Positions 18,615-31,914 of a stretch of DNA of 64,000 nt are shown here, one piece after another. The notes beneath the pieces were generated by a model. The model ran no database searches. It was not told the origin of the DNA and worked only from the letters and a program-made list of their open reading frames with translations. The position numbers were made by a program, and so were the translations under genes. This stretch comes from Pocillopora damicornis (taxonomy: Eukaryota): assembly GCF_003704095.1 (NCBI RefSeq), contig NW_020845565.1, positions 62,001 through 126,000 of the forward strand, written 5' to 3'. Numbering within the stretch: the first letter of the stretch is position 1; each line of letters opens with the position of its first letter.

Positions 18615-20331
18615 GGGAAATTATTTAGCACACTTGAAACAAGAAATAAGTAACTGGCTGTAACCTGCAGCTGTTGGGTCTACAGAGAGCCCCCCTCCAA
18701 AAAAAAAATTCCCATTAACCTCTGCACAAAACAGGGCACATAGAACATGGAACTAACTATAGACTGAAGGCTTCTAGAATCTTAATATGTTGTAAGCCAG
18801 GGAAAATGAAGGGACAATTTTTCTTATACGGTATGCTGAAAGCCACTTTAAAAACACAAAGTTAAGTTGCAGGCAACTTTAAAAAATTATTACCTTCCCA
18901 GTTTCTTATTCAAAGAGTCATATTCAGACTTGCAAATGGCAATGCCATGTTTTACACAGCTAACTTTGCCCTGCATTATATTATGCTGGCTTTCTCTTAA
19001 TCTTTTAATGACATTCTTGACATTAATCCTCTCCTATCAGCATCTTCNNNNNNNNNNNNNNNNNNNNNNNNNNNNNNNNNNNNNNNNNNNNNNNNNNNNN
19101 NNNNNNNNNNNNNNNNNNNNNNNNNNNNNNNNNNNNNNNNNNNNNNNNNNNNNNNNNNNNNNNNNNNNNNNNNNNNNNNNNCAGAAAGGAAAGAACCATA
19201 AAATTCCAGAAAGGAAGTTGGTCACAGCGCATATAATAAAATGGTTCAAAACCAAAATATACCACAAAGGAAATATTGGTCACCGAGCATACACAATAGT
19301 GGTTCAAAACCATTTAAAACCTAGGATGTGCCATTAAATTTTTTAAAGAGGAGCTTTGTGAAAACAAGGACATCAGTAAGAAGAAACAGTTACATACACA
19401 TAATTGTTATTAGTCACCACAACGAGTGGGTCATGTTCCTTGTAAATATTTTCAGGAAAAGAGTAGGTTGTGACTGAATATTTATAATTAGGACTTTATT
19501 TACTAGGTAATACTATTTAACAACAACCCAAAAGCCAACATTTCAATTTTGAATATTTCAAGGGCTTTTGGTAAAGAATCTTTGATCAGACTTTGATGGT
19601 TATATGTAGTTTTAAAATGTTTCCATTTATAGCTTTTGTGTGTCAAGTGTCATGATCAAAATTTATTTTCCTGTTATAAATGATGATGCTGTATCTGGTG
19701 ATAAATTATTACAAAATGAAATGTAACTCTAAGTGATATCTTTTTTATGAAAGTAGATGTATTTTTCTTGATGCAACATTATTTATGCTATTAAGTACGT
19801 GTAACTATTTACAATAAACTATTTTAAAACAGTAGATTATTTTTATATATGTGCTATAAAAGGCATGGTAAGTACATCTTTATTCTGCTTACAATGTCAA
19901 GTGGTAAATGTTGATACCAAAGAAAAAAAAATAAAAAAAAATAAATTCAGGTTCTGGAATCAGTGCCTGCACGGGCTGTATATCCACTGACCCAAGTAAG
20001 TGGGAACCTCTTGCTTTCTGCATCTTTTGATAACAGATGTGAAAGTTGGGACATTGGCAAGTCAGAACAGCTGTTATACAGGCAGGACTATATATTACTG
20101 TCAATGGTACACAAGCAAGTGAACTACAAAAATACTGTTTGAAAATTTTATTATCACTGTGAATTAATCAGTATACAGAGAAGAAATCAGGCCCAGTCTT
20201 GGTTGCAAGACATTCCAGTTACACAGCTCTTGTTCAAAGACAACCTGGGAAAGAAGATAAAAAGATCACAAGTGCAGTGAATCCCATTTTGGCAAAGTTA
20301 ACAGAGTTAGGAAGTGTGATTTTAATAGAAG

Positions 20332-20410
20332 AAAGCCTCAGTATTAATGTAGTCTTCAGAAGTAAATATCAGTGGATTATGACTGAATATATTAAGTCAT
20401 CACTGGCTTT
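20332..20410 (-). ncRNA. Box C/D snoRNA, 28S guide TTCAGTCATAATCC (family not recognised)
   Basis: AAAGCC-A-GTGATGA...TTCAGTCATAATCC-A-CTGA(D')...CTGAAGA(C')...CTGA-GGCTTT. Perfect 6-bp terminal stem and 14-nt complementarity to the conserved 28S segment GGATTATGACTGAA. Confidence 0.88.
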
Positions 20411-20808
20411 CAACTGGGGGTTTGAACACTGGGCATTATCTTCCAAACTAAGGATAATACCATCATGATCCACAACCTTTTCCATGACATTTTTTCGCTG
20501 TTTTCCATTGTAAACAATCAGGGCTTGGCTGAAAATACTGCAAAAATGATTATTTACTCAATATATTTCTCACCTTGCTAAATGTATTCTGAGAAAATTA
20601 TTGTCCATCTGTTCCCATGATTTCCATGGCAGAATCAAATTTGATGAACCTAGAAAAATATGAATACAACTTTCATTTTCCTTTTATTTTTCTTTTTGAC
20701 CAAAGCCCCCTTTACAATAGAACTTGAACTCTAAGAGAGGCAACTGCTCTGGTTTTCCACAAACTTTTAGTCTTCAGGATATGCAAACACAATGCAAATA
20801 CAATAATT

Positions 20809-21262
20809 CAGGGCGTGAAATTGATTTTTTTTCTGATAGCCACTTGGCTCCTAGATTATTCAAAGTGGTAGCCAATTAAAAAAAAGTTGGTTGTCATTTT
20901 CAAAGTCAAACAAACCCTTTTTTTTACACTGTCATCGTTCTAGAAATTAAGTTAGGGAAAAGATCTTTAACGTACTACAAAGTGGACAATAGAATGGATG
21001 ATATGCAATGTTTAAGCTCGCCTAAATCCATCCTAAATCTAGTTATCAATTGAGATGCATGTGCTGTGTTTTGGAAACAAACTTAACGAGGAAGTTTGCT
21101 GCGGATTTATCTTTGCAAATCTTTTTAATTTACTATATCTCTAAGTAAGGTTATGATAAAACATTCTACTTGCCAATTTGGCAACTAATTTTCAGGATTT
21201 GGTTGCCAAAGTAAAAAAATTTGTCGCATTGGCGCCTGTATTAGGTGCAATTTCACGCCCTG
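20809..21262. mobile_element. Non-autonomous DNA transposon (hAT-like MITE, 454 bp)
   Basis: Perfect 15-bp TIRs CAGGGCGTGAAATTG / CAATTTCACGCCCTG, flanked by the direct repeat TAATT. Confidence 0.8.
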
Positions 21263-21450
21263 TAATTACCTTGTAAACTAAAGGAGCATAACACTTGATC
21301 CCAAATCACAACCTACATGTACAACATCAGTTATTTGATGAGACATAATGAGAAAATACCTCACTATCACATGGAAATAGAATTAAAAATCAACAAGTAA
21401 TCATGATTGACAACTTCTCCATTAAGGCTTCTCTGGGTCACCAGAATGCT

Positions 21451-21529
21451 AGTTCAGCAATCAACCACTTTGCCATCCTGCATATCTGTAGCATGCCTTA
21501 GTTGATCATTGACTTCCCACATCACAAAC
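21451..21529 (-). ncRNA. Possible degenerate/orphan box C/D snoRNA
   Basis: C-like GTGATGT or ATGATCA, internal CAGA (D') and terminal CTGA with a short AGT/ACT stem. Sits alone in a host-gene intron like its neighbours. No convincing target. Confidence 0.35.
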
Positions 21530-21707
21530 ATATCATGTTTGATCTCTTATAATATTCAAACATACCAATTTGCAAGATTGTAACCAGAGAAGGATCTATC
21601 ATTGAACCTAAGAACTCTAATCTGTTGTTGTCAAAGTTTCAACTACAGTAATTGGTGCATTTTAACCTTTGTGCCTTATAGAACATCCCTGAAACAGTCT
21701 CTACAAA

Positions 21708-21784
21708 GTGGCCTCAGAAATTTTGGTGATATTTATCATCAGCTATATTCAAGAGTAGCAAATACTTTATGCATCATTGGCCAC
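21708..21784 (-). ncRNA. SNORD76: Box C/D snoRNA, U76/SNORD76-like
   Basis: GTGGCC-A-ATGATGC...TATTTGCTACT-C-TTGA(D')...CTGATGA(C')...CTGA-GGCCAC. Guide is complementary to 28S AGTAGCAAATA, in the register I recall for human U76. Confidence 0.85.
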
Positions 21785-22124
21785 ATCCATGATTGACAAA
21801 CATCAAAATAAATACATCTTGTTAAAAATTTCAATTAAATCACAGGACCTGTAGAATCACTACCATCAATTTTTTTTTTCAAAATCAAAGCACTTAATAA
21901 TTAATTGATGAAAATTTTCAGATATACCAGGAATGAAAAGGGGAATCAATTAGCAATAAAATTTCACTTACCATGACAGTGCCTCAACTTCTGATCTTTA
22001 ACCTGCCTGCTTTAAACCACTGGTATTCTAAACATCCAGGACAAAAAGGAAGAACAAGTGGTTAAAAAAATACAAATTAAAAAACCTTGTGTACAATTAA
22101 AGCCACAGAGAGGAGTTTTTAAGT

Positions 22125-22514
22125 TTAACCCTTAACTGTTTTCCCAACATTTCCTGAGGTGCTGATTAGGAGAATTTGTTTGACAATCAAGAGCTCCTTT
22201 AGCCGGCTATCATTTCCTTTATTCTTAGGACCTTAACCCTTTAATCCCTAGGAGTGACTAGCATTTAATTTCTCCTTACAATATCACTACTGAATCACAC
22301 ATCAGTGTTAAGAGAATAGAGGAAATGATCACCAACTGCAGAAACTCTTGATTGTTAGACAAATCCTCCTTGTCAGCACCTTGGTAAATGTACAGATAAC
22401 TGTATGGAGAATATGAATACTGATGTTAGGGTATTAAGGGTTAATGTTGGATTCCAAGATGATACTGTGAGGAGAAGTTAAAAGCCAGTCATTCTCAGGG
22501 GTTGAAGGCTTAAA
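22125..22514. mobile_element. Nested pair of TTAA-MITEs (inner copy 22233-22444 inserted in an oppositely oriented outer copy)
   Basis: Inner element TTAACCCT...AGGGTTAA. The flanks on both sides continue as the reverse complement of the same family. Confidence 0.8.
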
Positions 22515-22563
22515 GATCATGACATGTACCAAACAATTTGGAAACAGGATACCAAATACAAGA

Positions 22564-22647
22564 GGTGCATCAGGCAAAGCCAGATTTTCTAATCAAGTCA
22601 CAGAGTGACTTTATTATGTCCCTATTCTGGAGGTCATCACTTGCACC
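22564..22647 (-). ncRNA. Box C/D snoRNA, U74/SNORD74-like
   Basis: GGTGCA-A-GTGATGA...ATAGGGACA...CTGA-TGCACC with a 6-bp stem. ATAGGGACA is complementary to 28S TGTCCCTAT (U74 target region). The D' box is non-canonical. Confidence 0.7.
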
Positions 22648-22801
22648 AGACTCAACAATATAAGTTGTTGTCACATGTTGATCATGCTTACCTCACCTCA
22701 AAAACCTTGCTTGGTTAGGTCTTGGCAGTGTACCTAAGATAAGTACCCCATTGTTAGACAAAGAAAAGGAATTTCAACTTTTTCAGTTAAACCTTTTTGG
22801 T

Positions 22802-22867
22802 GGTTTCAGATAGGGGCGAAGTTTATCGTCACCATCAATCAGCTGAACTATGAACTCATCACAAACC
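22802..22867 (-). ncRNA. SNORD80: Box C/D snoRNA, U80/SNORD80-like (yeast snR60 family), double guide
   Basis: GGTTT-GTGATGA-GTT-CATAGTTCA-G-CTGA(D')...GTGACGA(C')...TTCGCCCCTAT-CTGA-AACC. Guides are complementary to 28S TGAACTATG and ATAGGGGCGAA. Confidence 0.92.
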
Positions 22868-23180
22868 ACACCAAGTAATGCAACAGCTTGAAAACTTCCT
22901 TAAAAACATTCAAGGCCAGCCTCTCAGAGGAGCAAGGCAAGAAAATCTATGATCACTGATGACTTGTAGCAGAGACAACTGTATTATTATTTTATAATTT
23001 GACTTTACCTCACCTCATTACAAACACAAATAGGAACCACAAAAATAAAAGCTGTGCAAATTTCTTATGCCATTCACTCCCTGAAACAAAAACAATTAGC
23101 TTCAATTAGAATGAGACATGCAGTTGCTTGTTAGACACCAGAAAGAAACTTGGAAGTTTTTTCAATCAGACCTTAGGGGC

Positions 23181-23246
23181 GGTTTCATATAGGGGGGAGA
23201 ATTATCATCATCAGCAATCGGCTGAACTATGAACTCATCACAAACC
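23181..23246 (-). ncRNA. Second U80-like snoRNA copy with a degenerate D-box guide
   Basis: 5' half matches 22802-22867 (GTGATGAGTTCATAGTTCAG, D' CCGA). The 3' guide has changed to TCTCCCCCCTAT and the D box to ATGA. Confidence 0.8.
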
Positions 23247-23793
23247 ACATTAGGTAAGGCAAAAACTTGTAGACTTCTTTGAGTATGAGGAAGGCCAGCC
23301 TCTTACAGGAGCAAGTTAAGAGAAAATCTAAGATCAAAAATAACTAAATCACTTTGTTGAAAACAGAGAGCCTTATTTACAGAGATTTAACCCTTTACGC
23401 ACTAACATTAGTAGTTATATTTTCCCCACTGTTCACTACACATTTCTAATAGTACTGACTAGGAGAATTTGCCTGACAATCAGGAGCTTCTTAAAGTTGT
23501 GATCATTTCCTTTATTTACATGACCTTTGCATTTGATATAAAGGAGAAATTAGCAGCCATCACTCTTAAGAGATTAAAAGATTAAATATCATTTAGATGT
23601 AATTTGCATGTTTTTGGATCAAATTACCACCTACCCCAAAAGAAAACCACACCAAGCTTTGCAAGTTTCTCCATTCAAAAGCTCCCTGAAACAAAAAGAA
23701 TAGCAGATTTAATTAGGATGTGCATGTACCACATTCAAGAACAGGGTTAGGCATGTTAACTACATGATTCTAACCCCTTGTTATCACAGACAC

Positions 23794-23863
23794 AGTGTCA
23801 GATAGAGCTAATGTCAACCTCATTACAAAAATGTTCAGTTGAACTATGCAGTCATCACACACC
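23794..23863 (-). ncRNA. Box C/D snoRNA combining a U77-type D' guide and a U44-type D guide
   Basis: GTGATGA-CT-GCATAGTTCA-A-CTGA(D')...ATGAGG(C')...ATTAGCTCTA-T-CTGA-CAC. Complementary to 28S TGAACTATGC and 18S TAGAGCTAAT. Confidence 0.88.
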
Positions 23864-24289
23864 AGTCATCAATCAGAGCTCTCTTAAAGAATGAGAAGGG
23901 GAATACTTGATTATCTACATGTAGTAGAGCATATGCAATCTTGAATGACAAAAATTAACGTATCTATTTCTATCAATAGTCTACTGAGTCTGATAATTGA
24001 TGACACTCACTTTGTTCAAGGTAAATTGAGAGTAAGAATCCAGGGCAGCTTTTCTAGCATGATGTGACGATGAAAACAACGATGACAGCACACCCAGTAA
24101 AATCTACCCTCAAATCTTGTCGGACACATCCTGCATTGGCTCATGAAATGCACCACTGACCTTGGACATTGAAACATACTTAATATAAGTGTATGAACAC
24201 CTGCCCTAAACAGAAATAATTTAATTCAAAATTCTCTGTGACCTGAGCAGTCTTAACCCTTTGGCTCCCAAGATCTCCCCTCTAGCTTC

Positions 24290-24333
24290 TAAGGTACCTA
24301 AGGTAAGGTACCTAAGGTAAGGTACCTAAGGTA
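24290..24333. repeat. Short tandem repeat (TAAGGTACCTAAGG)x~3 inside a degenerate MITE
   Basis: taaggtacctaagg-taaggtacctaagg-taaggtacctaagg is read directly from the sequence. Confidence 0.8.
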
Positions 24334-24429
24334 TGGATATTATAGGGAGAAGTTCCATGTTAATCACTTCTGAGAGTTGAAGGGTTGAAAAAGGTTAAGT
24401 CAGCTCTTGCACTTTCAGACTGTGTAAGA

Positions 24430-24509
24430 GTGCCTCAGCGATCTTGGTGGGAAAAGTTGTCATCACATCTCAATGATCAACTAGCAAATATTGAAATCAT
24501 CATTGGCAC
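24430..24509 (-). ncRNA. SNORD24: Box C/D snoRNA, U24/SNORD24, double guide
   Basis: GTGCC-A-ATGATGA...AATATTTGCTA-G-TTGA(D')...GTGATGA(C')...CCACCAAGATC-G-CTGA-GGCAC. Both guides are complementary to 28S GATCTTGGTGGTAGTAGCAAATATT, as in U24. Confidence 0.92.
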
Positions 24510-24745
24510 AAGAAACACTGTCAATACCAATGAATCACACACACTTGAAAAACACAACAATGGTAATTTTAACTCTACCCCAAAAACTAATTTGAATCCA
24601 ATATTTGAAAACTTCTTACCGGTTTGCCTTTCTCTGAACTGTTATTCACTTTGACCTTTCTCTGTAAAGTAGAGAAACGACCGAATCAGCACAATTTCTT
24701 TTCAATCACTTTTGTAACCATGAAAAATATTTAACAAAGTTATCA

Positions 24746-24825
24746 TGCATCAGGCCTATCGATCACACATCACAAAGCTTCCGATTTCAAAGCCTTCTGT
24801 GTCATAGGTTATTTCATCAGGTGCA
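24746..24825 (-). ncRNA. Box C/D snoRNA, 28S guide GATCGATAGGC (family not recognised)
   Basis: TGCA-C-CTGATGA...GTGATGT(C')...GATCGATAGGC-CTGA-TGCA. 11-nt complement to the non-vertebrate 28S motif GCCTATCGATC, ~88 nt upstream of a 3' splice site. Confidence 0.8.
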
Positions 24826-25621
24826 CATAACAGATACTGGGGTATTCTCATTACTAAGTAGCATGAAAAACAGATTAGGGACCAGTTGTTGTTTATCCCC
24901 TGGTGTGAAGGGGGTGGGGGTCTNNNNNNNNNNNNNNNNNNNNNNNNNNNNNNNNNNNNNNNNNNNNNNNNNNNNNNNNNNNNNNNNNNNNNNNNNNNNN
25001 NNNNNNNNNNNNNNNNNNNNNNNNNNNNNNNNNNNNNNNNNNNNNNNNNNNNNNNACTGAAGTTCAAGATAACTGAAATTTTTGCTAGGAACTCTTTTTC
25101 CATTTTCTCTTCAAGCAGAAGAAGATTAAGAGGGAAGGAATCCTAATATATTCCAACTTCCTGACTTGTCAAATCATACAGTAGCCAGCTTTATAGAAGT
25201 ATAGGGATACTTTCAGCAAATCTAAATATAATAACACTTACTGACACCTGACTCACATGCCCAATTTTTTCATTTGATTAGGGATGGTTCAATTTTGGAG
25301 TGTGTTATTTTGCTGAATTTTATACTGCTGGAATTGATTTTTGCAGATCAAGGACTGTTTGCATGAGATAGATTGTCTGCAAAAACTGAAACCCGCTTAA
25401 TGGATATGCTTCACCATGTCATAGTCTTGCAACAGTGGTACGACATGTAATGCACAAATTAACTGTCTTTGCTACTAAAAATAGCTCATTTAATCAAAGT
25501 ATTAGAACTTACCTTTTAGGAAGAGTTGTCTGGAGTTTTCACCTAATAGGATAAAGTATGTATTTCAAATTTCAAAGAGTAAAAAAACTAAAGTGGGGCT
25601 GTTTTTAGAAGGACAGAAAAA

Positions 25622-25706
25622 GTGTACCTTCAGTTAACACAGTCATGATTCTCTTCACTGACGCACTAAGAGAGATTCCCATTTAACAAGTTCATCACTG
25701 GTACAC
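25622..25706 (-). ncRNA. SNORD79: Box C/D snoRNA, U79/SNORD79-like
   Basis: GTGTACC-A-GTGATGA...ATGGGAATCTC-T-CTTA(D')...GTGAAGA(C')...CTGA-A-GGTACAC with a 7-bp stem. Guide GGGAATCTC is complementary to 28S GAGATTCCC. Confidence 0.85.
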
Positions 25707-26705
25707 AGTCAACTCACTGTTCTCGCTTGATGCCGTGATTGTTTTCATTCTATCACAGTTATCACCACAATCTCAATGATCTTTCCATCTGGTTCTTAGT
25801 TATCATTGGGAAAGAGTTTCATGATTATGGCGAACAATACTTGAGAGAGTTCATTTACCTTTGAAAACGACTGTTTAAGATAAACGAAATGGTCAACTTC
25901 GTACCCTGCATTTCATTTAATCAATCGTGATACCACGTGCTTTTGGTCTAATGTGCTCATTAACGGGACAATCTACACTGAAACTTTTTTCAATTTAGGT
26001 AACTACAAAAGACAGTTCAAATAAAAAATTTTATACACCTTTAGCAACAATGACATCAATCAACTTATAACGGCTTCAATATATAGTACCTTGCGTCGGT
26101 TATCAATAGGGGAGCTGGAGCGCCATCTTGGAAACGACCTTGAGACTTTTAAGTTTCACCCCATTTAAAAATGGGGCGAAACAGCGCGTAGTATGAGTCT
26201 ACGCTTTTCTAACGAGCAGTTGAGGTCTTGAACAGATATCACGCACAAAAGTAAGCAATATTTTAAAGCAGTTCACTACATCTACTTGTTGCCATTCACC
26301 CTCAAGTCGTACCTTACAACCTCGTGGGCCGCGCTTTGTACGTTAAACCTCGTTTCCACACATCACTTATCATCGTCCCGGTGAACAACGAATTTTACCG
26401 GAAAAAGCCGAAGATTCATCGTAGAAAAATGATCTTACTGTTAATATTTCCTTATCTTCCTTGAAAAAGAATTCTATCACATTCGCCCCGAGAAATTTTA
26501 TTTTATTTGAAAATCACGCATGTTTCGTTTGAAGTGAGACAAAATAAAGCTATTTGATGAACATGCAATTCGTTTTTCAGTTTGAACGTGACTTGTGAGT
26601 CATTTTGGGGGTTCAGGGAAACCGGAAGTAAGCTGTGGCAAACTCTTGCTTTGACACGACAACCGAACTTCATCCGAGCAAAATGACGAAACTCTATGGC
26701 GTGGA

Positions 26706-26877: not shown

Positions 26878-30635
<3,758 letters not shown>

Positions 30636-31914
30636 CTTGGCTTATGGTAGAGAAAAGAGACTTAAACAATTTGTACCCTTATACAATCGGGGCACACTCT
30701 TTTTACAATTCTAAAAAGCACTTTGAAAAATTGGTGAACATTGCTTGGTGGTTATGTTGTTAATCACTTTGATCAATGAAATGTCTGTGCTGCTAATGGA
30801 CATGAAACAGAAAGGAAAGTATAATATAGTGTGTACAGCTTGTTGGTAAATCAGTTGGTTATTCTCTCGCTCTTTTCATCCATTGTAAAACTCTCGATAG
30901 TTTGGGTTCTTGGAGGGCATCAGACTACAAACAATTCCTTTTATTTATCCTTTAACCCTCTCAATTTGAATTTCAAGAGAGCTAGAAAATTTTTTCATTA
31001 ATAAAAAATAACTACATGTACATTTGTCTTTTTTTACGAGTTTACACAACAGTAGTAATGTATGATAGCAGTTTCCTGTTTTTGGAAACTTTGCATTGCC
31101 TTATGGGTTGCATAGAGGTTAAAGTGTAGAAAACGGGGGGGGGGGGGNNNNNNNNNNNNNNNNNNNNNNNNNNNNNNNNNNNNNNNNNNNNNNNNNNNNN
31201 NNNNNNNNNNNNNNNNNNNNNNNNNNNNNNNNNNNNNNNNNNNNNNNTCAAACGACACTGTCATAAAGAACAAGACTGTAACATAAAGAGACGTTTTCTT
31301 CGTTACGTCAGGATACGATGGATAACCTAAATACAATGGTACAGTTCAATATTTTTCTTGCAATAATATACCGCCATATTCTTTCACTCTTGAATCTTTA
31401 ACAACATCAGTATCGATATTCTCAATACTCGTCTCTTCTCTATACATTTCCTTAGGTATTGACACGGAGAATTCGTTTAACAAGCAAAGCTTCTACGGTT
31501 GGCGATCATTTCCTTAATTCTTTTGATCTTAATGAATGATTTAGCAGTATTACTGTAAGGGGAAATTAGATACTGGTTGAGGGTTGAGGGAAGATAAAAT
31601 TAAACGCCGTATTTTAGTATGATACAACAAAGGCATTTTGCGACTGTCGACTAAATTACACCGAAGTCACCGAGTCGTTTCGTAAGGCAAAATAATTTTG
31701 ATTGTTTTTGTTCCTCGAATTTTTTTTAGCATGCAGATATTTTTTATTATGACGTAAATAGCTTTGTAGCGAGCTGAATAGTTTGTAAACTATGCTGTCT
31801 ATACTTTGTACATATATTCCACACTTCAACTACGACGTAACATAAGCCTTCAGCACAACTGAGCTTCTGACTAAGCAAAATATATACAGGGCTACAACTT
31901 CTATGAAGTCCAAC

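What the first reader, a model, noticed from the sequence alone, without database searches (positions are those of the whole stretch)
23794..23863. Single snoRNA uniting the guides of human U77 (28S) and U44 (18S)
The D' guide GCATAGTTCA and D guide ATTAGCTCTA sit in one molecule. In human GAS5, as I recall, U77 and U44 occupy adjacent introns and each uses one of these guides, at the same D' and D positions respectively. This may be the ancestral double-guide RNA that later subfunctionalised, which would be strong independent support for orthology of the host.
Basis: partly seen in the sequence, partly recalled or inferred. Interest (0 to 1): 0.8.

Follow-up and report, generated by a model that had tools for sequence, protein, structure and literature searches.

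The report
Coral double-guide snoRNA, snR60/U80 paralogue
A real, conserved intronic box C/D snoRNA of stony corals carries one guide for a 28S rRNA site and one for an 18S site, but it is best read as a duplicate of its neighbour snR60/U80 whose second guide changed target, not the ancestor of human U77 and U44.

Summary
On the minus strand at about 23864-23793 lies a 72-nt box C/D snoRNA. It has a C box, a D' guide GCAUAGUUCA (28S, the snR60/U80/U77 site), a perfect D' box, a weak C' box, a D guide AUUAGCUCUA (18S, the U44 site) and a D box. It sits in a 325-nt GT-AG intron that RNA contigs of four runs show spliced out. It is single-copy and is the only element in this 234-Mb assembly with the 18S guide.

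Three other coral lineages, found on metagenome contigs, keep it at 90-92% identity while the flanks are randomised. All 8 variable sites fall outside the guides and boxes.

The evolutionary reading is not supported.
- In every lineage the RNA lies one intron upstream of a canonical snR60/U80 gene and resembles it along its whole length (50-55 of 70-74 positions).
- Its orthologues score 40.8-42.4 bits on Rfam's snR60/Z15 model (cut-off 41). SNORD44 gives 12.5 bits and SNORD77 nothing.
- Published work shows that zebrafish and chicken lack U77, with U80 copies in its place and U44 separate. Neurospora pairs the U44-type guide with a U45-type guide.

The mature RNA and the methylations themselves were not shown. 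The scan did not find this arrangement before on other DNA.

The parts
23793..23864 (-). Predicted mature box C/D snoRNA 'u3' (about 72 nt): terminal stem, C, D' guide, D', C'-like, D guide, D
   Evidence: Sequence read. Full-length snosnR60_Z15 alignment at 38.8 bits. Orthologues in 3 other coral lineages at 90-92% identity over flanks at random level. The ends are inferred from the stem, not measured.
23852..23857 (-). C box UGAUGA (preceded by G)
   Evidence: Invariant in alignment A2.
23840..23849 (-). D' antisense element GCAUAGUUCA, 10 nt. It is complementary to 28S UGAACUAUGC and the fifth-nucleotide rule points at the second A of GAAC (human A1521 / yeast A817 site).
   Evidence: The target motif GGUGAACUAUGCC is present in this genome's LSU fragment and in the Rfam LSU consensus. 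It has the same register as the Rfam snR60/Z15 consensus. Invariant in 4 lineages.
23835..23838 (-). D' box CUGA
   Evidence: Invariant.
23819..23824 (-). C'-like box AAUGAG (GUGAAG in the other lineages); degenerate
   Evidence: This is the variable part of the RNA.
23803..23812 (-). D antisense element AUUAGCUCUA, 10 nt. It is complementary to 18S UAGAGCUAAU and the fifth-nucleotide rule points at the A of UAG-A-GC (human A166 site).
   Evidence: The letters and register match the guide in published human RNU44. Invariant in 4 lineages. It is the only such guide in the assembly.
23798..23801 (-). D box CUGA
   Evidence: Invariant.
23686..24010 (-). Host intron (325 nt), AAA|GUGAGU ... UUUGUUUCAG|GG. 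The snoRNA lies about 145 nt from the 5' splice site and about 108 nt from the 3' splice site.
   Evidence: A joint 23684>24010 (cut +1, CT..AC on the + strand) appears in contigs of 4 RNA runs from 3 studies. Splice-site letters were read.
22798..22871 (-). Paralogue 'u1': canonical snR60/Z15/U80-type double guide (D' CAUAGUUCA to the same 28S A; D UUCGCCCCUAU to the 28S G1612-equivalent), in the intron about 22732-23011
   Evidence: Rfam snosnR60_Z15 45.9 bits and ceN111 51.8 bits, both above cut-off. Intron. It matches u3 at 50 of 74 positions here and 53-55 of 70 in the other lineages.
23177..23250 (-). 'u2': decaying copy of u1 (D' box CCGA, D box AUGA, D guide broken). It comes from a 379-bp tandem duplication seen only in the window's lineage and lies in the intron about 23080-23633.
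   Evidence: It is absent as a separate gene from the metagenome orthologues.

Best explanation
This is a functional intron-encoded box C/D snoRNA of stony corals. It is released from a 325-nt intron of a spliced multi-snoRNA host transcript with very short exons. As a fibrillarin snoRNP it would direct two ribose methylations. Its D' guide would target the 28S adenosine that snR60/U80/U77 serve (human A1521). Its D guide would target the 18S adenosine that U44 serves (human A166).

In origin it is a tandem paralogue of the snR60/U80-type gene in the next intron. It kept the scaffold, the terminal stem and the D' guide, while its D guide was retargeted from the 28S G1612-equivalent to 18S. How the retargeting happened is unresolved. 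It could be a few point changes, or a short conversion tract from a lost U44-like gene. The duplication predates the split of the four coral lineages sampled. The RNA is now the only carrier of the 18S guide in this genome.

Shown: the anatomy, the intron and its splicing, single-copy status, conservation, paralogy, and the 28S target motif. Inferred: accumulation of the mature RNA, snoRNP assembly, the two methylations, and the direction and mechanism of the guide change.
For: - Anatomy and guide register.
- Intron 23686-24010 spliced in contigs of 4 RNA runs from 3 studies, with GUGAGU and a pyrimidine tract followed by AG.
- The host carries one snoRNA per intron, all on the same strand.
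- Selection: 90-92% identity to three other coral lineages against 48-56% in the 150-nt flanks (shuffled 51 +/- 2). The 8 variable sites of 72 lie in the D'-C' spacer and the 3' stem. The stem change CACCA to CACUG keeps pairing through G.U.
- Paralogy with u1: 50-55 matches of 70-74, z 9-14. Other snoRNAs of the same host score 4-9 against 22-31.
- Rfam snR60/Z15 aligns the whole length at 38.8 bits here and at 40.8, 42.3 and 42.4 bits in the orthologues (cut-off 41).
- The u3-then-u1 order is conserved in all lineages.
- The D guides of u1 and u3 are 4 edits apart, P about 0.03.
- Sole 18S guide in the assembly.
- Both methylation sites are conserved between plants and humans, and guide re-assortment ('target switches') is documented in the fungal snR60 clan: PMC3511168, PMC5824354.
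Against: - No small-RNA data. The polyA and random-primed contigs leave 23701-23900 almost uncovered, apart from one low-depth unspliced contig. A stable 72-nt RNA is therefore not demonstrated.
- The functional rDNA is missing from the assembly. The only 18S piece reads UAGAGUUUAU, 2 mismatches to the guide. It is a truncated, decayed fragment: it ends at model position 605, has many non-canonical pairs, and departs from the conserved UAAUAC.
- The window copy scores just under the Rfam cut-off.
- Both duplexes are minimal at 10 bp.
- The guide similarity to u1 (P about 0.03) is only suggestive, so an origin as an old U44 gene that acquired snR60-like parts is not excluded.
Confidence: 0.72

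Rival explanations
1. One reading: this is the ancestral eumetazoan double-guide snoRNA. In vertebrates it duplicated and subfunctionalised into U77 (keeping D') and U44 (keeping D) in adjacent GAS5 introns, so it marks the host as a GAS5 orthologue.
For: Human GAS5 has SNORD77 and SNORD44 in adjacent introns. The guide positions (D' for 28S, D for 18S) and registers match. The coral host is a multi-snoRNA gene with tiny exons that also holds a U80-type and two U24/U76-type snoRNAs.
Against: Zebrafish gas5 has no U77 but has two U80 copies and a single U44. Chicken has two double-guide U80 cognates in the U77 slot and a separate U44, and the authors derive U77 from U80 within mammals. The U44-type guide exists in Neurospora with a U45-type partner and in plants as snoR18. 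The coral RNA is a full-length paralogue of its U80-type neighbour. The SNORD77 and SNORD44 models do not recognise it.
Confidence: 0.05
2. Weaker ancestral model: the U44 lineage itself began as an snR60/U80 duplicate with a retargeted D guide. Corals keep that double-guide stage, and vertebrate U44 is the same lineage after its D' guide decayed. U77 is unrelated.
For: By eye, against the published human RNU44: the D guide and register are the same, the spacing from C' to the guide is the same, and the spacer from the C box to the second CUGA is 13 nt as in the coral RNA. The u1 and u3 D guides are only 4 edits apart.
Against: Only 5 of 13 spacer positions match the coral D' guide, close to chance. 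The shared ACAU after D' is variable among corals. The SNORD44 model aligns only to the D guide. In Neurospora the U44-type guide has a different partner. No non-coral animal was examined.
Confidence: 0.15
3. The 18S complementarity is fortuitous. The RNA would then be a redundant or decaying U80 duplicate whose D guide has drifted and is not used.
For: A decaying duplicate (u2) does exist in this host. The duplex is only 10 bp. The one 18S fragment in the assembly mismatches the guide at 2 positions.
Against: The 11 nt upstream of box D are invariant in four lineages whose introns are randomised, whereas u2 lost its boxes quickly. The letters and register equal those of the human U44 guide. 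No other 18S-A166-type guide exists in the genome. The 18S fragment is a truncated pseudogene.
Confidence: 0.05

Closest known systems
snR60 / Z15 / U80 (SNORD80) family, Rfam RF00309
   Same: It has the same C box, terminal-stem style and D' guide (GCAUAGUUCA plus one nt plus CUGA) for the 28S A1521/A817 site. It shares the last four guide letters and the D box. The Rfam alignment covers the full length at 38.8 bits here and up to 42.4 bits in orthologues. It is adjacent to a canonical member and paralogous to it.
   Different: The D guide does not target the 28S G1612/G908 site. It targets 18S instead. This pairing of targets was not found in the papers read.
SNORD44 (U44) of vertebrates; plant snoR18
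   Same: The 10-nt D guide AUUAGCUCUA is the same and lies in the same register, so the same 18S adenosine is selected. It is intronic in a multi-snoRNA host with tiny exons.
   Different: No D' target is listed for U44 in the tables read. The SNORD44 covariance model matches only the guide, at 12.5 bits against a cut-off of 40. The 5' half of the coral RNA is snR60-like.
SNORD77 (U77) of mammals
   Same: It has the D' guide for 28S A1521 and, like the coral RNA, appears to derive from a duplicate of U80.
   Different: It is absent from zebrafish and chicken. No second target is listed for it in the papers read. The SNORD77 model gives no hit in this genome. At most it is a parallel case, not an orthologue.
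Neurospora Nc CD32 and the fungal snR60 clan CD_5 'target switches'
   Same: Nc CD32 shows the U44-type D guide combined with another guide in one RNA. The CD_5 clan shows paralogues of snR60 exchanging or changing targets after duplication.
   Different: Nc CD32 pairs it with a U45-type 18S guide, not the snR60 guide, and is confined to Sordariales. The fungal switches involve other 25S sites.

Membership tests
Box C/D snoRNA (class) | C box RUGAUGA near the 5' end and D box CUGA near the 3' end, brought together by a short terminal stem | tested here: met
   GUGAUGA and CUGA are present. The stem is UGGUG/CACUG (three Watson-Crick pairs plus two G.U) here and UGGUG/CACCA in the other lineages.
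Box C/D snoRNA (class) | Internal D' and C' boxes | tested here: met
   The D' box is a perfect, invariant CUGA. The C' box is degenerate (AAUGAG or GUGAAG) and variable.
Box C/D snoRNA (class) | An antisense element of at least 9-10 nt ending next to D or D', complementary to the organism's own rRNA | tested here: inconclusive
   28S: the 10-nt match is present in this genome's LSU fragment. 18S: the functional rDNA is not in the assembly. The only 18S piece is a decayed fragment with 2 mismatches. The guide equals that of human RNU44.
Box C/D snoRNA (class) | Intronic position in a spliced host transcript (animal mode of biogenesis) | tested here: met
   The intron 23686-24010 is removed in contigs of 4 RNA runs.
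Box C/D snoRNA (class) | A stable RNA of about 60-90 nt bound by Snu13, Nop56, Nop58 and fibrillarin, with the target 2'-O-methylated | not testable with these tools
   Only polyA and random-primed contigs were available. They do not cover the snoRNA.
snR60/Z15/U80 (RF00309) | D' guide for the 28S A1521/A817 site | tested here: met
   It is identical to the family consensus, including the register.
snR60/Z15/U80 (RF00309) | D guide for the 28S G1612/G908 site | tested here: not met
   The D guide reads AUUAGCUCUAU, not UUCGCCCCUAU as in the neighbour u1.
snR60/Z15/U80 (RF00309) | Score at or above the Rfam gathering cut-off (41 bits) | tested here: inconclusive
   The window copy scores 38.8 bits. 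The orthologues score 40.8, 42.3 and 42.4 bits.
SNORD44 (RF00287) | D guide for 18S A166 in the canonical register | tested here: met
SNORD44 (RF00287) | Score at or above the Rfam gathering cut-off (40 bits) | tested here: not met
   12.5 bits, model positions 45-59 only. No locus in the genome reaches the cut-off.
SNORD77 (RF00591) | Recognition by the family covariance model (cut-off 35 bits) | tested here: not met
   There is no hit at E <= 10 in the whole genome. In cmscan it is outcompeted by its clan mate RF00309.

The most novel reading that the evidence does not exclude
The U44 lineage as a whole may have been born from an snR60/U80 tandem duplicate by a change of a few letters in the D guide (28S G site to 18S A site). 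Corals would then preserve the transitional double-guide stage that vertebrates have since reduced to single-guide U44. That would be a rare caught-in-the-act case of how a new rRNA methylation guide arises from an old one.
Probability: 0.15. Interest if true: 0.55.

Novelty: new variant of a known kind. Interest (0 to 1): 0.35.

Why it matters
It gives stony corals their apparent sole guide for a deeply conserved 18S methylation. Loss of the equivalent snoRNA in zebrafish causes developmental defects (PMC3245925).

It is also a clean natural example of a target switch after tandem duplication. The scaffold and one guide are kept while the other guide is redirected to a different rRNA.

It carries a caution as well. 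Shared guide combinations and neighbourhoods are weak evidence for host-gene orthology, because guide modules re-assort repeatedly (mammalian U77, chicken U80 copies, Neurospora CD32, the fungal snR60 clan).

Tried and rejected
1. Flank homology as proof that u3 belongs to the u1/u2 duplication. The strong similarity between the stretches downstream of u3 and of u2 (z 17) turned out to be the exon plus 3' splice region copied by the recent 379-bp duplication that made u2. u2 is private to the window's lineage. That similarity therefore says nothing about u3. Paralogy rests on the snoRNA bodies themselves.
2. The species' own 18S. Rfam and pattern searches of the assembly found only a truncated, decayed fragment.
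3. There is no supra-threshold hit anywhere. The six highest-scoring sub-threshold SNORD44 hits are not U44-like.
4. Scans for the two-guide pattern in bacterial and archaeal genome contigs and in viral contigs were blank. These collections hardly contain animal DNA, so the blanks say nothing about other animals.
5. A vestige of the snR60 D' guide in human RNU44. This was compared by eye only with the sequence printed in two papers. Five of 13 positions match, which is inconclusive. No human sequence was given to any sequence tool. One 14-letter term was used in the paper search.
6. A synteny survey through the divergent neighbour BiP. This was not done, because it would need a joined exon model. 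Likewise, the coding potential of the spliced host was not tested.
7. Smith & Steitz 1998 (PMC109273) is not held in the library. No paper on cnidarian snoRNAs of this family was found.

Full report
WHAT IS THERE

The finding's coordinates hold a box C/D snoRNA on the minus strand. Read 5' to 3' it consists of:
- stem strand UGGUG (23864-23860) and two spacer nucleotides;
- C box UGAUGA (23857-23852);
- a 13-nt spacer whose last part is the D' guide GCAUAGUUCA (23849-23840);
- one nucleotide, then D' box CUGA (23838-23835);
- a variable spacer with a weak C' box AAUGAG (23824-23819);
- the D guide AUUAGCUCUA (23812-23803);
- one nucleotide, then D box CUGA (23801-23798);
- stem strand CACUG (23797-23793).

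With the fifth-nucleotide rule, the D' guide selects the second A of 28S GGUGA-A-CUAUGCC. The D guide selects the A of 18S UAG-A-GCUAAU. Only the strand was left unstated.

HOST AND EXPRESSION

The locus is held by sequencing runs labelled coral or marine metagenome, from 10 studies. Contigs of four RNA runs from three studies were laid on 20101-26100. They show eight introns with CT..AC ends on the + strand, that is GT..AG on the minus strand. There is one snoRNA per intron and the exons are very short (about 35-150 nt).

The candidate lies in the intron 23686-24010. That intron begins AAA|GUGAGU and ends UUUGUUUCAG|GG. The snoRNA is about 145 nt from the 5' splice site and about 108 nt from the 3' splice site.

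These libraries are polyA or random-primed and are kept as contigs. They leave 23701-23900 almost empty, apart from one low-depth unspliced contig. Splicing of the host is therefore shown, but accumulation of the mature snoRNA is not.

TARGETS

The assembly has 234,350,878 bases in 4393 contigs and lacks functional rDNA.

An LSU fragment on contig C2498 still reads GAUGGUGAACUAUGCCUGAAUAGG. This matches the Rfam LSU consensus and the D' guide over 10 bp.

The only 18S piece, on contig C1013, covers model positions 4-605 and reads UAGAGUUUAU, two mismatches to the D guide. Its Rfam alignment shows that it is truncated and decayed. Its last third has many non-canonical pairs, conserved blocks are rewritten, and it departs from the conserved UAAUAC.

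The D guide has the same ten letters, in the same register, as the guide in the human RNU44 sequence printed in PMC7439130 and PMC12956961. Chicken U44 likewise uses a 10-nt 3' guide.

UNIQUENESS AND CONSERVATION

The 101-nt region is single-copy in the genome. Pattern scans for a C box followed by the 18S guide and a D box find only this site. The SNORD44 covariance model finds nothing above its cut-off, and its best sub-threshold hits carry no such guide.

A scan of public metagenome contigs for the two-guide arrangement returned five contigs. They fall into three lineages: L014/L017, L015/L018 and L016. Against the window, only the snoRNAs align (77-95% identity). They appear in the same order as in the window, while introns and exons do not align.

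Over the 72-nt RNA the window is 90-92% identical to these lineages. The 150-nt flanks are 48-56% identical, which is the level of shuffled sequence (51 +/- 2). Eight positions vary. Six lie in the D'-C' spacer and C' box, and two lie in the 3' stem strand, where CACCA becomes CACUG and pairing is kept by G.U. The stem, the C box, the D' guide, the D' box, the D guide and the D box are invariant.

That pattern is what selection on both guides predicts.

WHAT IT IS RELATED TO

Rfam places three elements with the same D' guide in this host.
- u1 (22798-22871) is a canonical snR60/Z15/U80-type double guide, above the cut-off. Its D guide UUCGCCCCUAU targets the 28S G1612-equivalent site.
- u2 (23177-23250) is a decaying copy, with D' box CCGA, D box AUGA and a broken guide.
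- u3 is the candidate.

u1 and u2 are a 379-bp tandem duplication, flanks included. u2 is missing from the other coral lineages, so that duplication is recent.

In every lineage u3 is followed 335-480 nt downstream by u1. Within each lineage u3 and u1 match along their whole length, at 50-55 of 70-74 positions (z 9-14). The match covers the stem, the C box, the D' guide, the C' region, the last four guide letters, the D box and the 3' stem. The other snoRNAs of the host score at background.

The Rfam snR60/Z15 model aligns u3 end to end, at 38.8 bits here and 40.8, 42.3 and 42.4 bits in the orthologues (cut-off 41). SNORD44 aligns only to the D guide, at 12.5 bits. SNORD77 gives no hit in the genome.

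The D guides of u1 and u3 are four edits apart, P about 0.03 against random 11-mers. This is suggestive, no more.

u3 is therefore best read as an old tandem paralogue of the snR60/U80 gene whose D guide now addresses 18S. It is not a half-and-half fusion of two unrelated RNAs.

THE EVOLUTIONARY CLAIM

The order is SNORD74, 75, 76, 77, 44, 78, 79, 80, 47, 81, and U77 and U80 share A1521 (PMC6856654).

But U77 is not old.
- Zebrafish gas5 lacks U77, has U80 in duplicate and has a single U44 (PMC3245925).
- In chicken the U77 slot (intron 4) and the next intron hold two double-guide U80 cognates, and U44 sits in intron 7. The authors conclude that mammalian U77 evolved from a U80 copy (PMC2653536).

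The U44-type guide, in contrast, is older than animals and keeps changing partners.
- Neurospora Nc CD32 combines it with a U45-type D' guide.
- Arabidopsis has snoR18 (PMC2780460; PMC3511168).
- Target switches among paralogues of the snR60 clan are documented in fungi (PMC5824354).

U77 and U44 therefore cannot be the two halves of a subfunctionalised ancestor of this kind, and the coral RNA cannot serve as strong evidence that its host is orthologous to GAS5. Mammalian U77 and coral u3 are better seen as parallel outcomes of duplicating U80. One has no second target listed in the papers read. The other carries the 18S guide in that position.

A weaker idea survives untested: that the U44 lineage itself began as such a duplicate. 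By eye, human RNU44 shares the D-guide register, the C'-to-guide spacing and a 13-nt spacer before its second CUGA. However, only 5 of 13 spacer letters match the coral D' guide, and the shared ACAU after D' varies among corals.

LIMITS

- No animal genomes other than the window's were searchable. The blank scans of prokaryotic and viral contigs carry no weight.
- The synteny route through the divergent neighbour BiP (27224-30635, ending in KDEL) would have needed a joined exon model and was left out.
- The human RNU44 sequence was read in papers and compared by eye only.

VERDICT

The functional reading, a double guide for these 28S and 18S sites, is well supported by anatomy and conservation but lacks direct RNA or methylation evidence. 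The reading as the ancestor of U77 plus U44 is contradicted.

This is a new variant (a new pairing of targets) within a well-known family. It is of moderate interest as a clear example of guide retargeting after tandem duplication.

Noticed in passing
window 23177-23250 (-), and 23012-23121 vs 23634-23727: u2 is a decaying copy of the snR60/U80-type snoRNA (D' box CCGA, D box AUGA). It was made by a 379-bp tandem duplication that also copied the preceding exon and 3' splice region. It is absent from the three other coral lineages, so it is recent.
   Followed up: yes
G000 C1013:20040-20586 (L002 1501-2047) and C2498:563767-564100 (L010 1329-1661): The assembly seems to lack functional rDNA. 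The only 18S and 28S matches covering the two target sites are truncated, mutated fragments embedded in other sequence.
   Followed up: partly
window 21710-21782 (-) and 24431-24508 (-): Two SNORD24-type snoRNAs (60.3 and 57.4 bits) sit in separate introns of the same host. The downstream copy has a weakened D guide. Both are conserved in the metagenome orthologues.
   Followed up: partly
window 22101-22500, 23387-23527 and 24301-24500: Intronic stretches show summed contig depths in the thousands in RNA runs. There is a 100-nt repeat pair (22135-22234 and 23428-23527, 73% identical) and a 14-nt minisatellite at 24290-24336. These probably reflect dispersed repeats inserted in the host introns.
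   Followed up: no
L015 857-940 and 1168-1238; L018 2027-2110 and 2338-2408 (contigs oriented to the minus-strand sense of the window): Lineage B carries two copies of the snoRNA that is single in the window at 22568-22648. This is another lineage-specific tandem duplication in the same host.
   Followed up: no
L016 about 748-824 (+): In lineage C the snR60/U80-type neighbour (u1) has a D' box CCGA instead of CUGA, while u3 keeps a perfect D' box. This may be the start of a division of labour for the shared 28S site.
   Followed up: no
window 27224-30635 (+): An HSP70-family gene ending in KDEL (BiP-like) lies head to head with the snoRNA host. Its last exon is a 332-codon ORF at 29637-30635. 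A run of N follows at about 31100-31200 and was left as it is.
   Followed up: partly
window 20648-21969 vs 20643-21969: RNA run X18 shows an alternative joint (20642>21970) with 18 extra letters between the two sides. The other runs show the GT..AG joint 20647>21970. This could be an alternative or a strain-specific splice form of the host.
   Followed up: no
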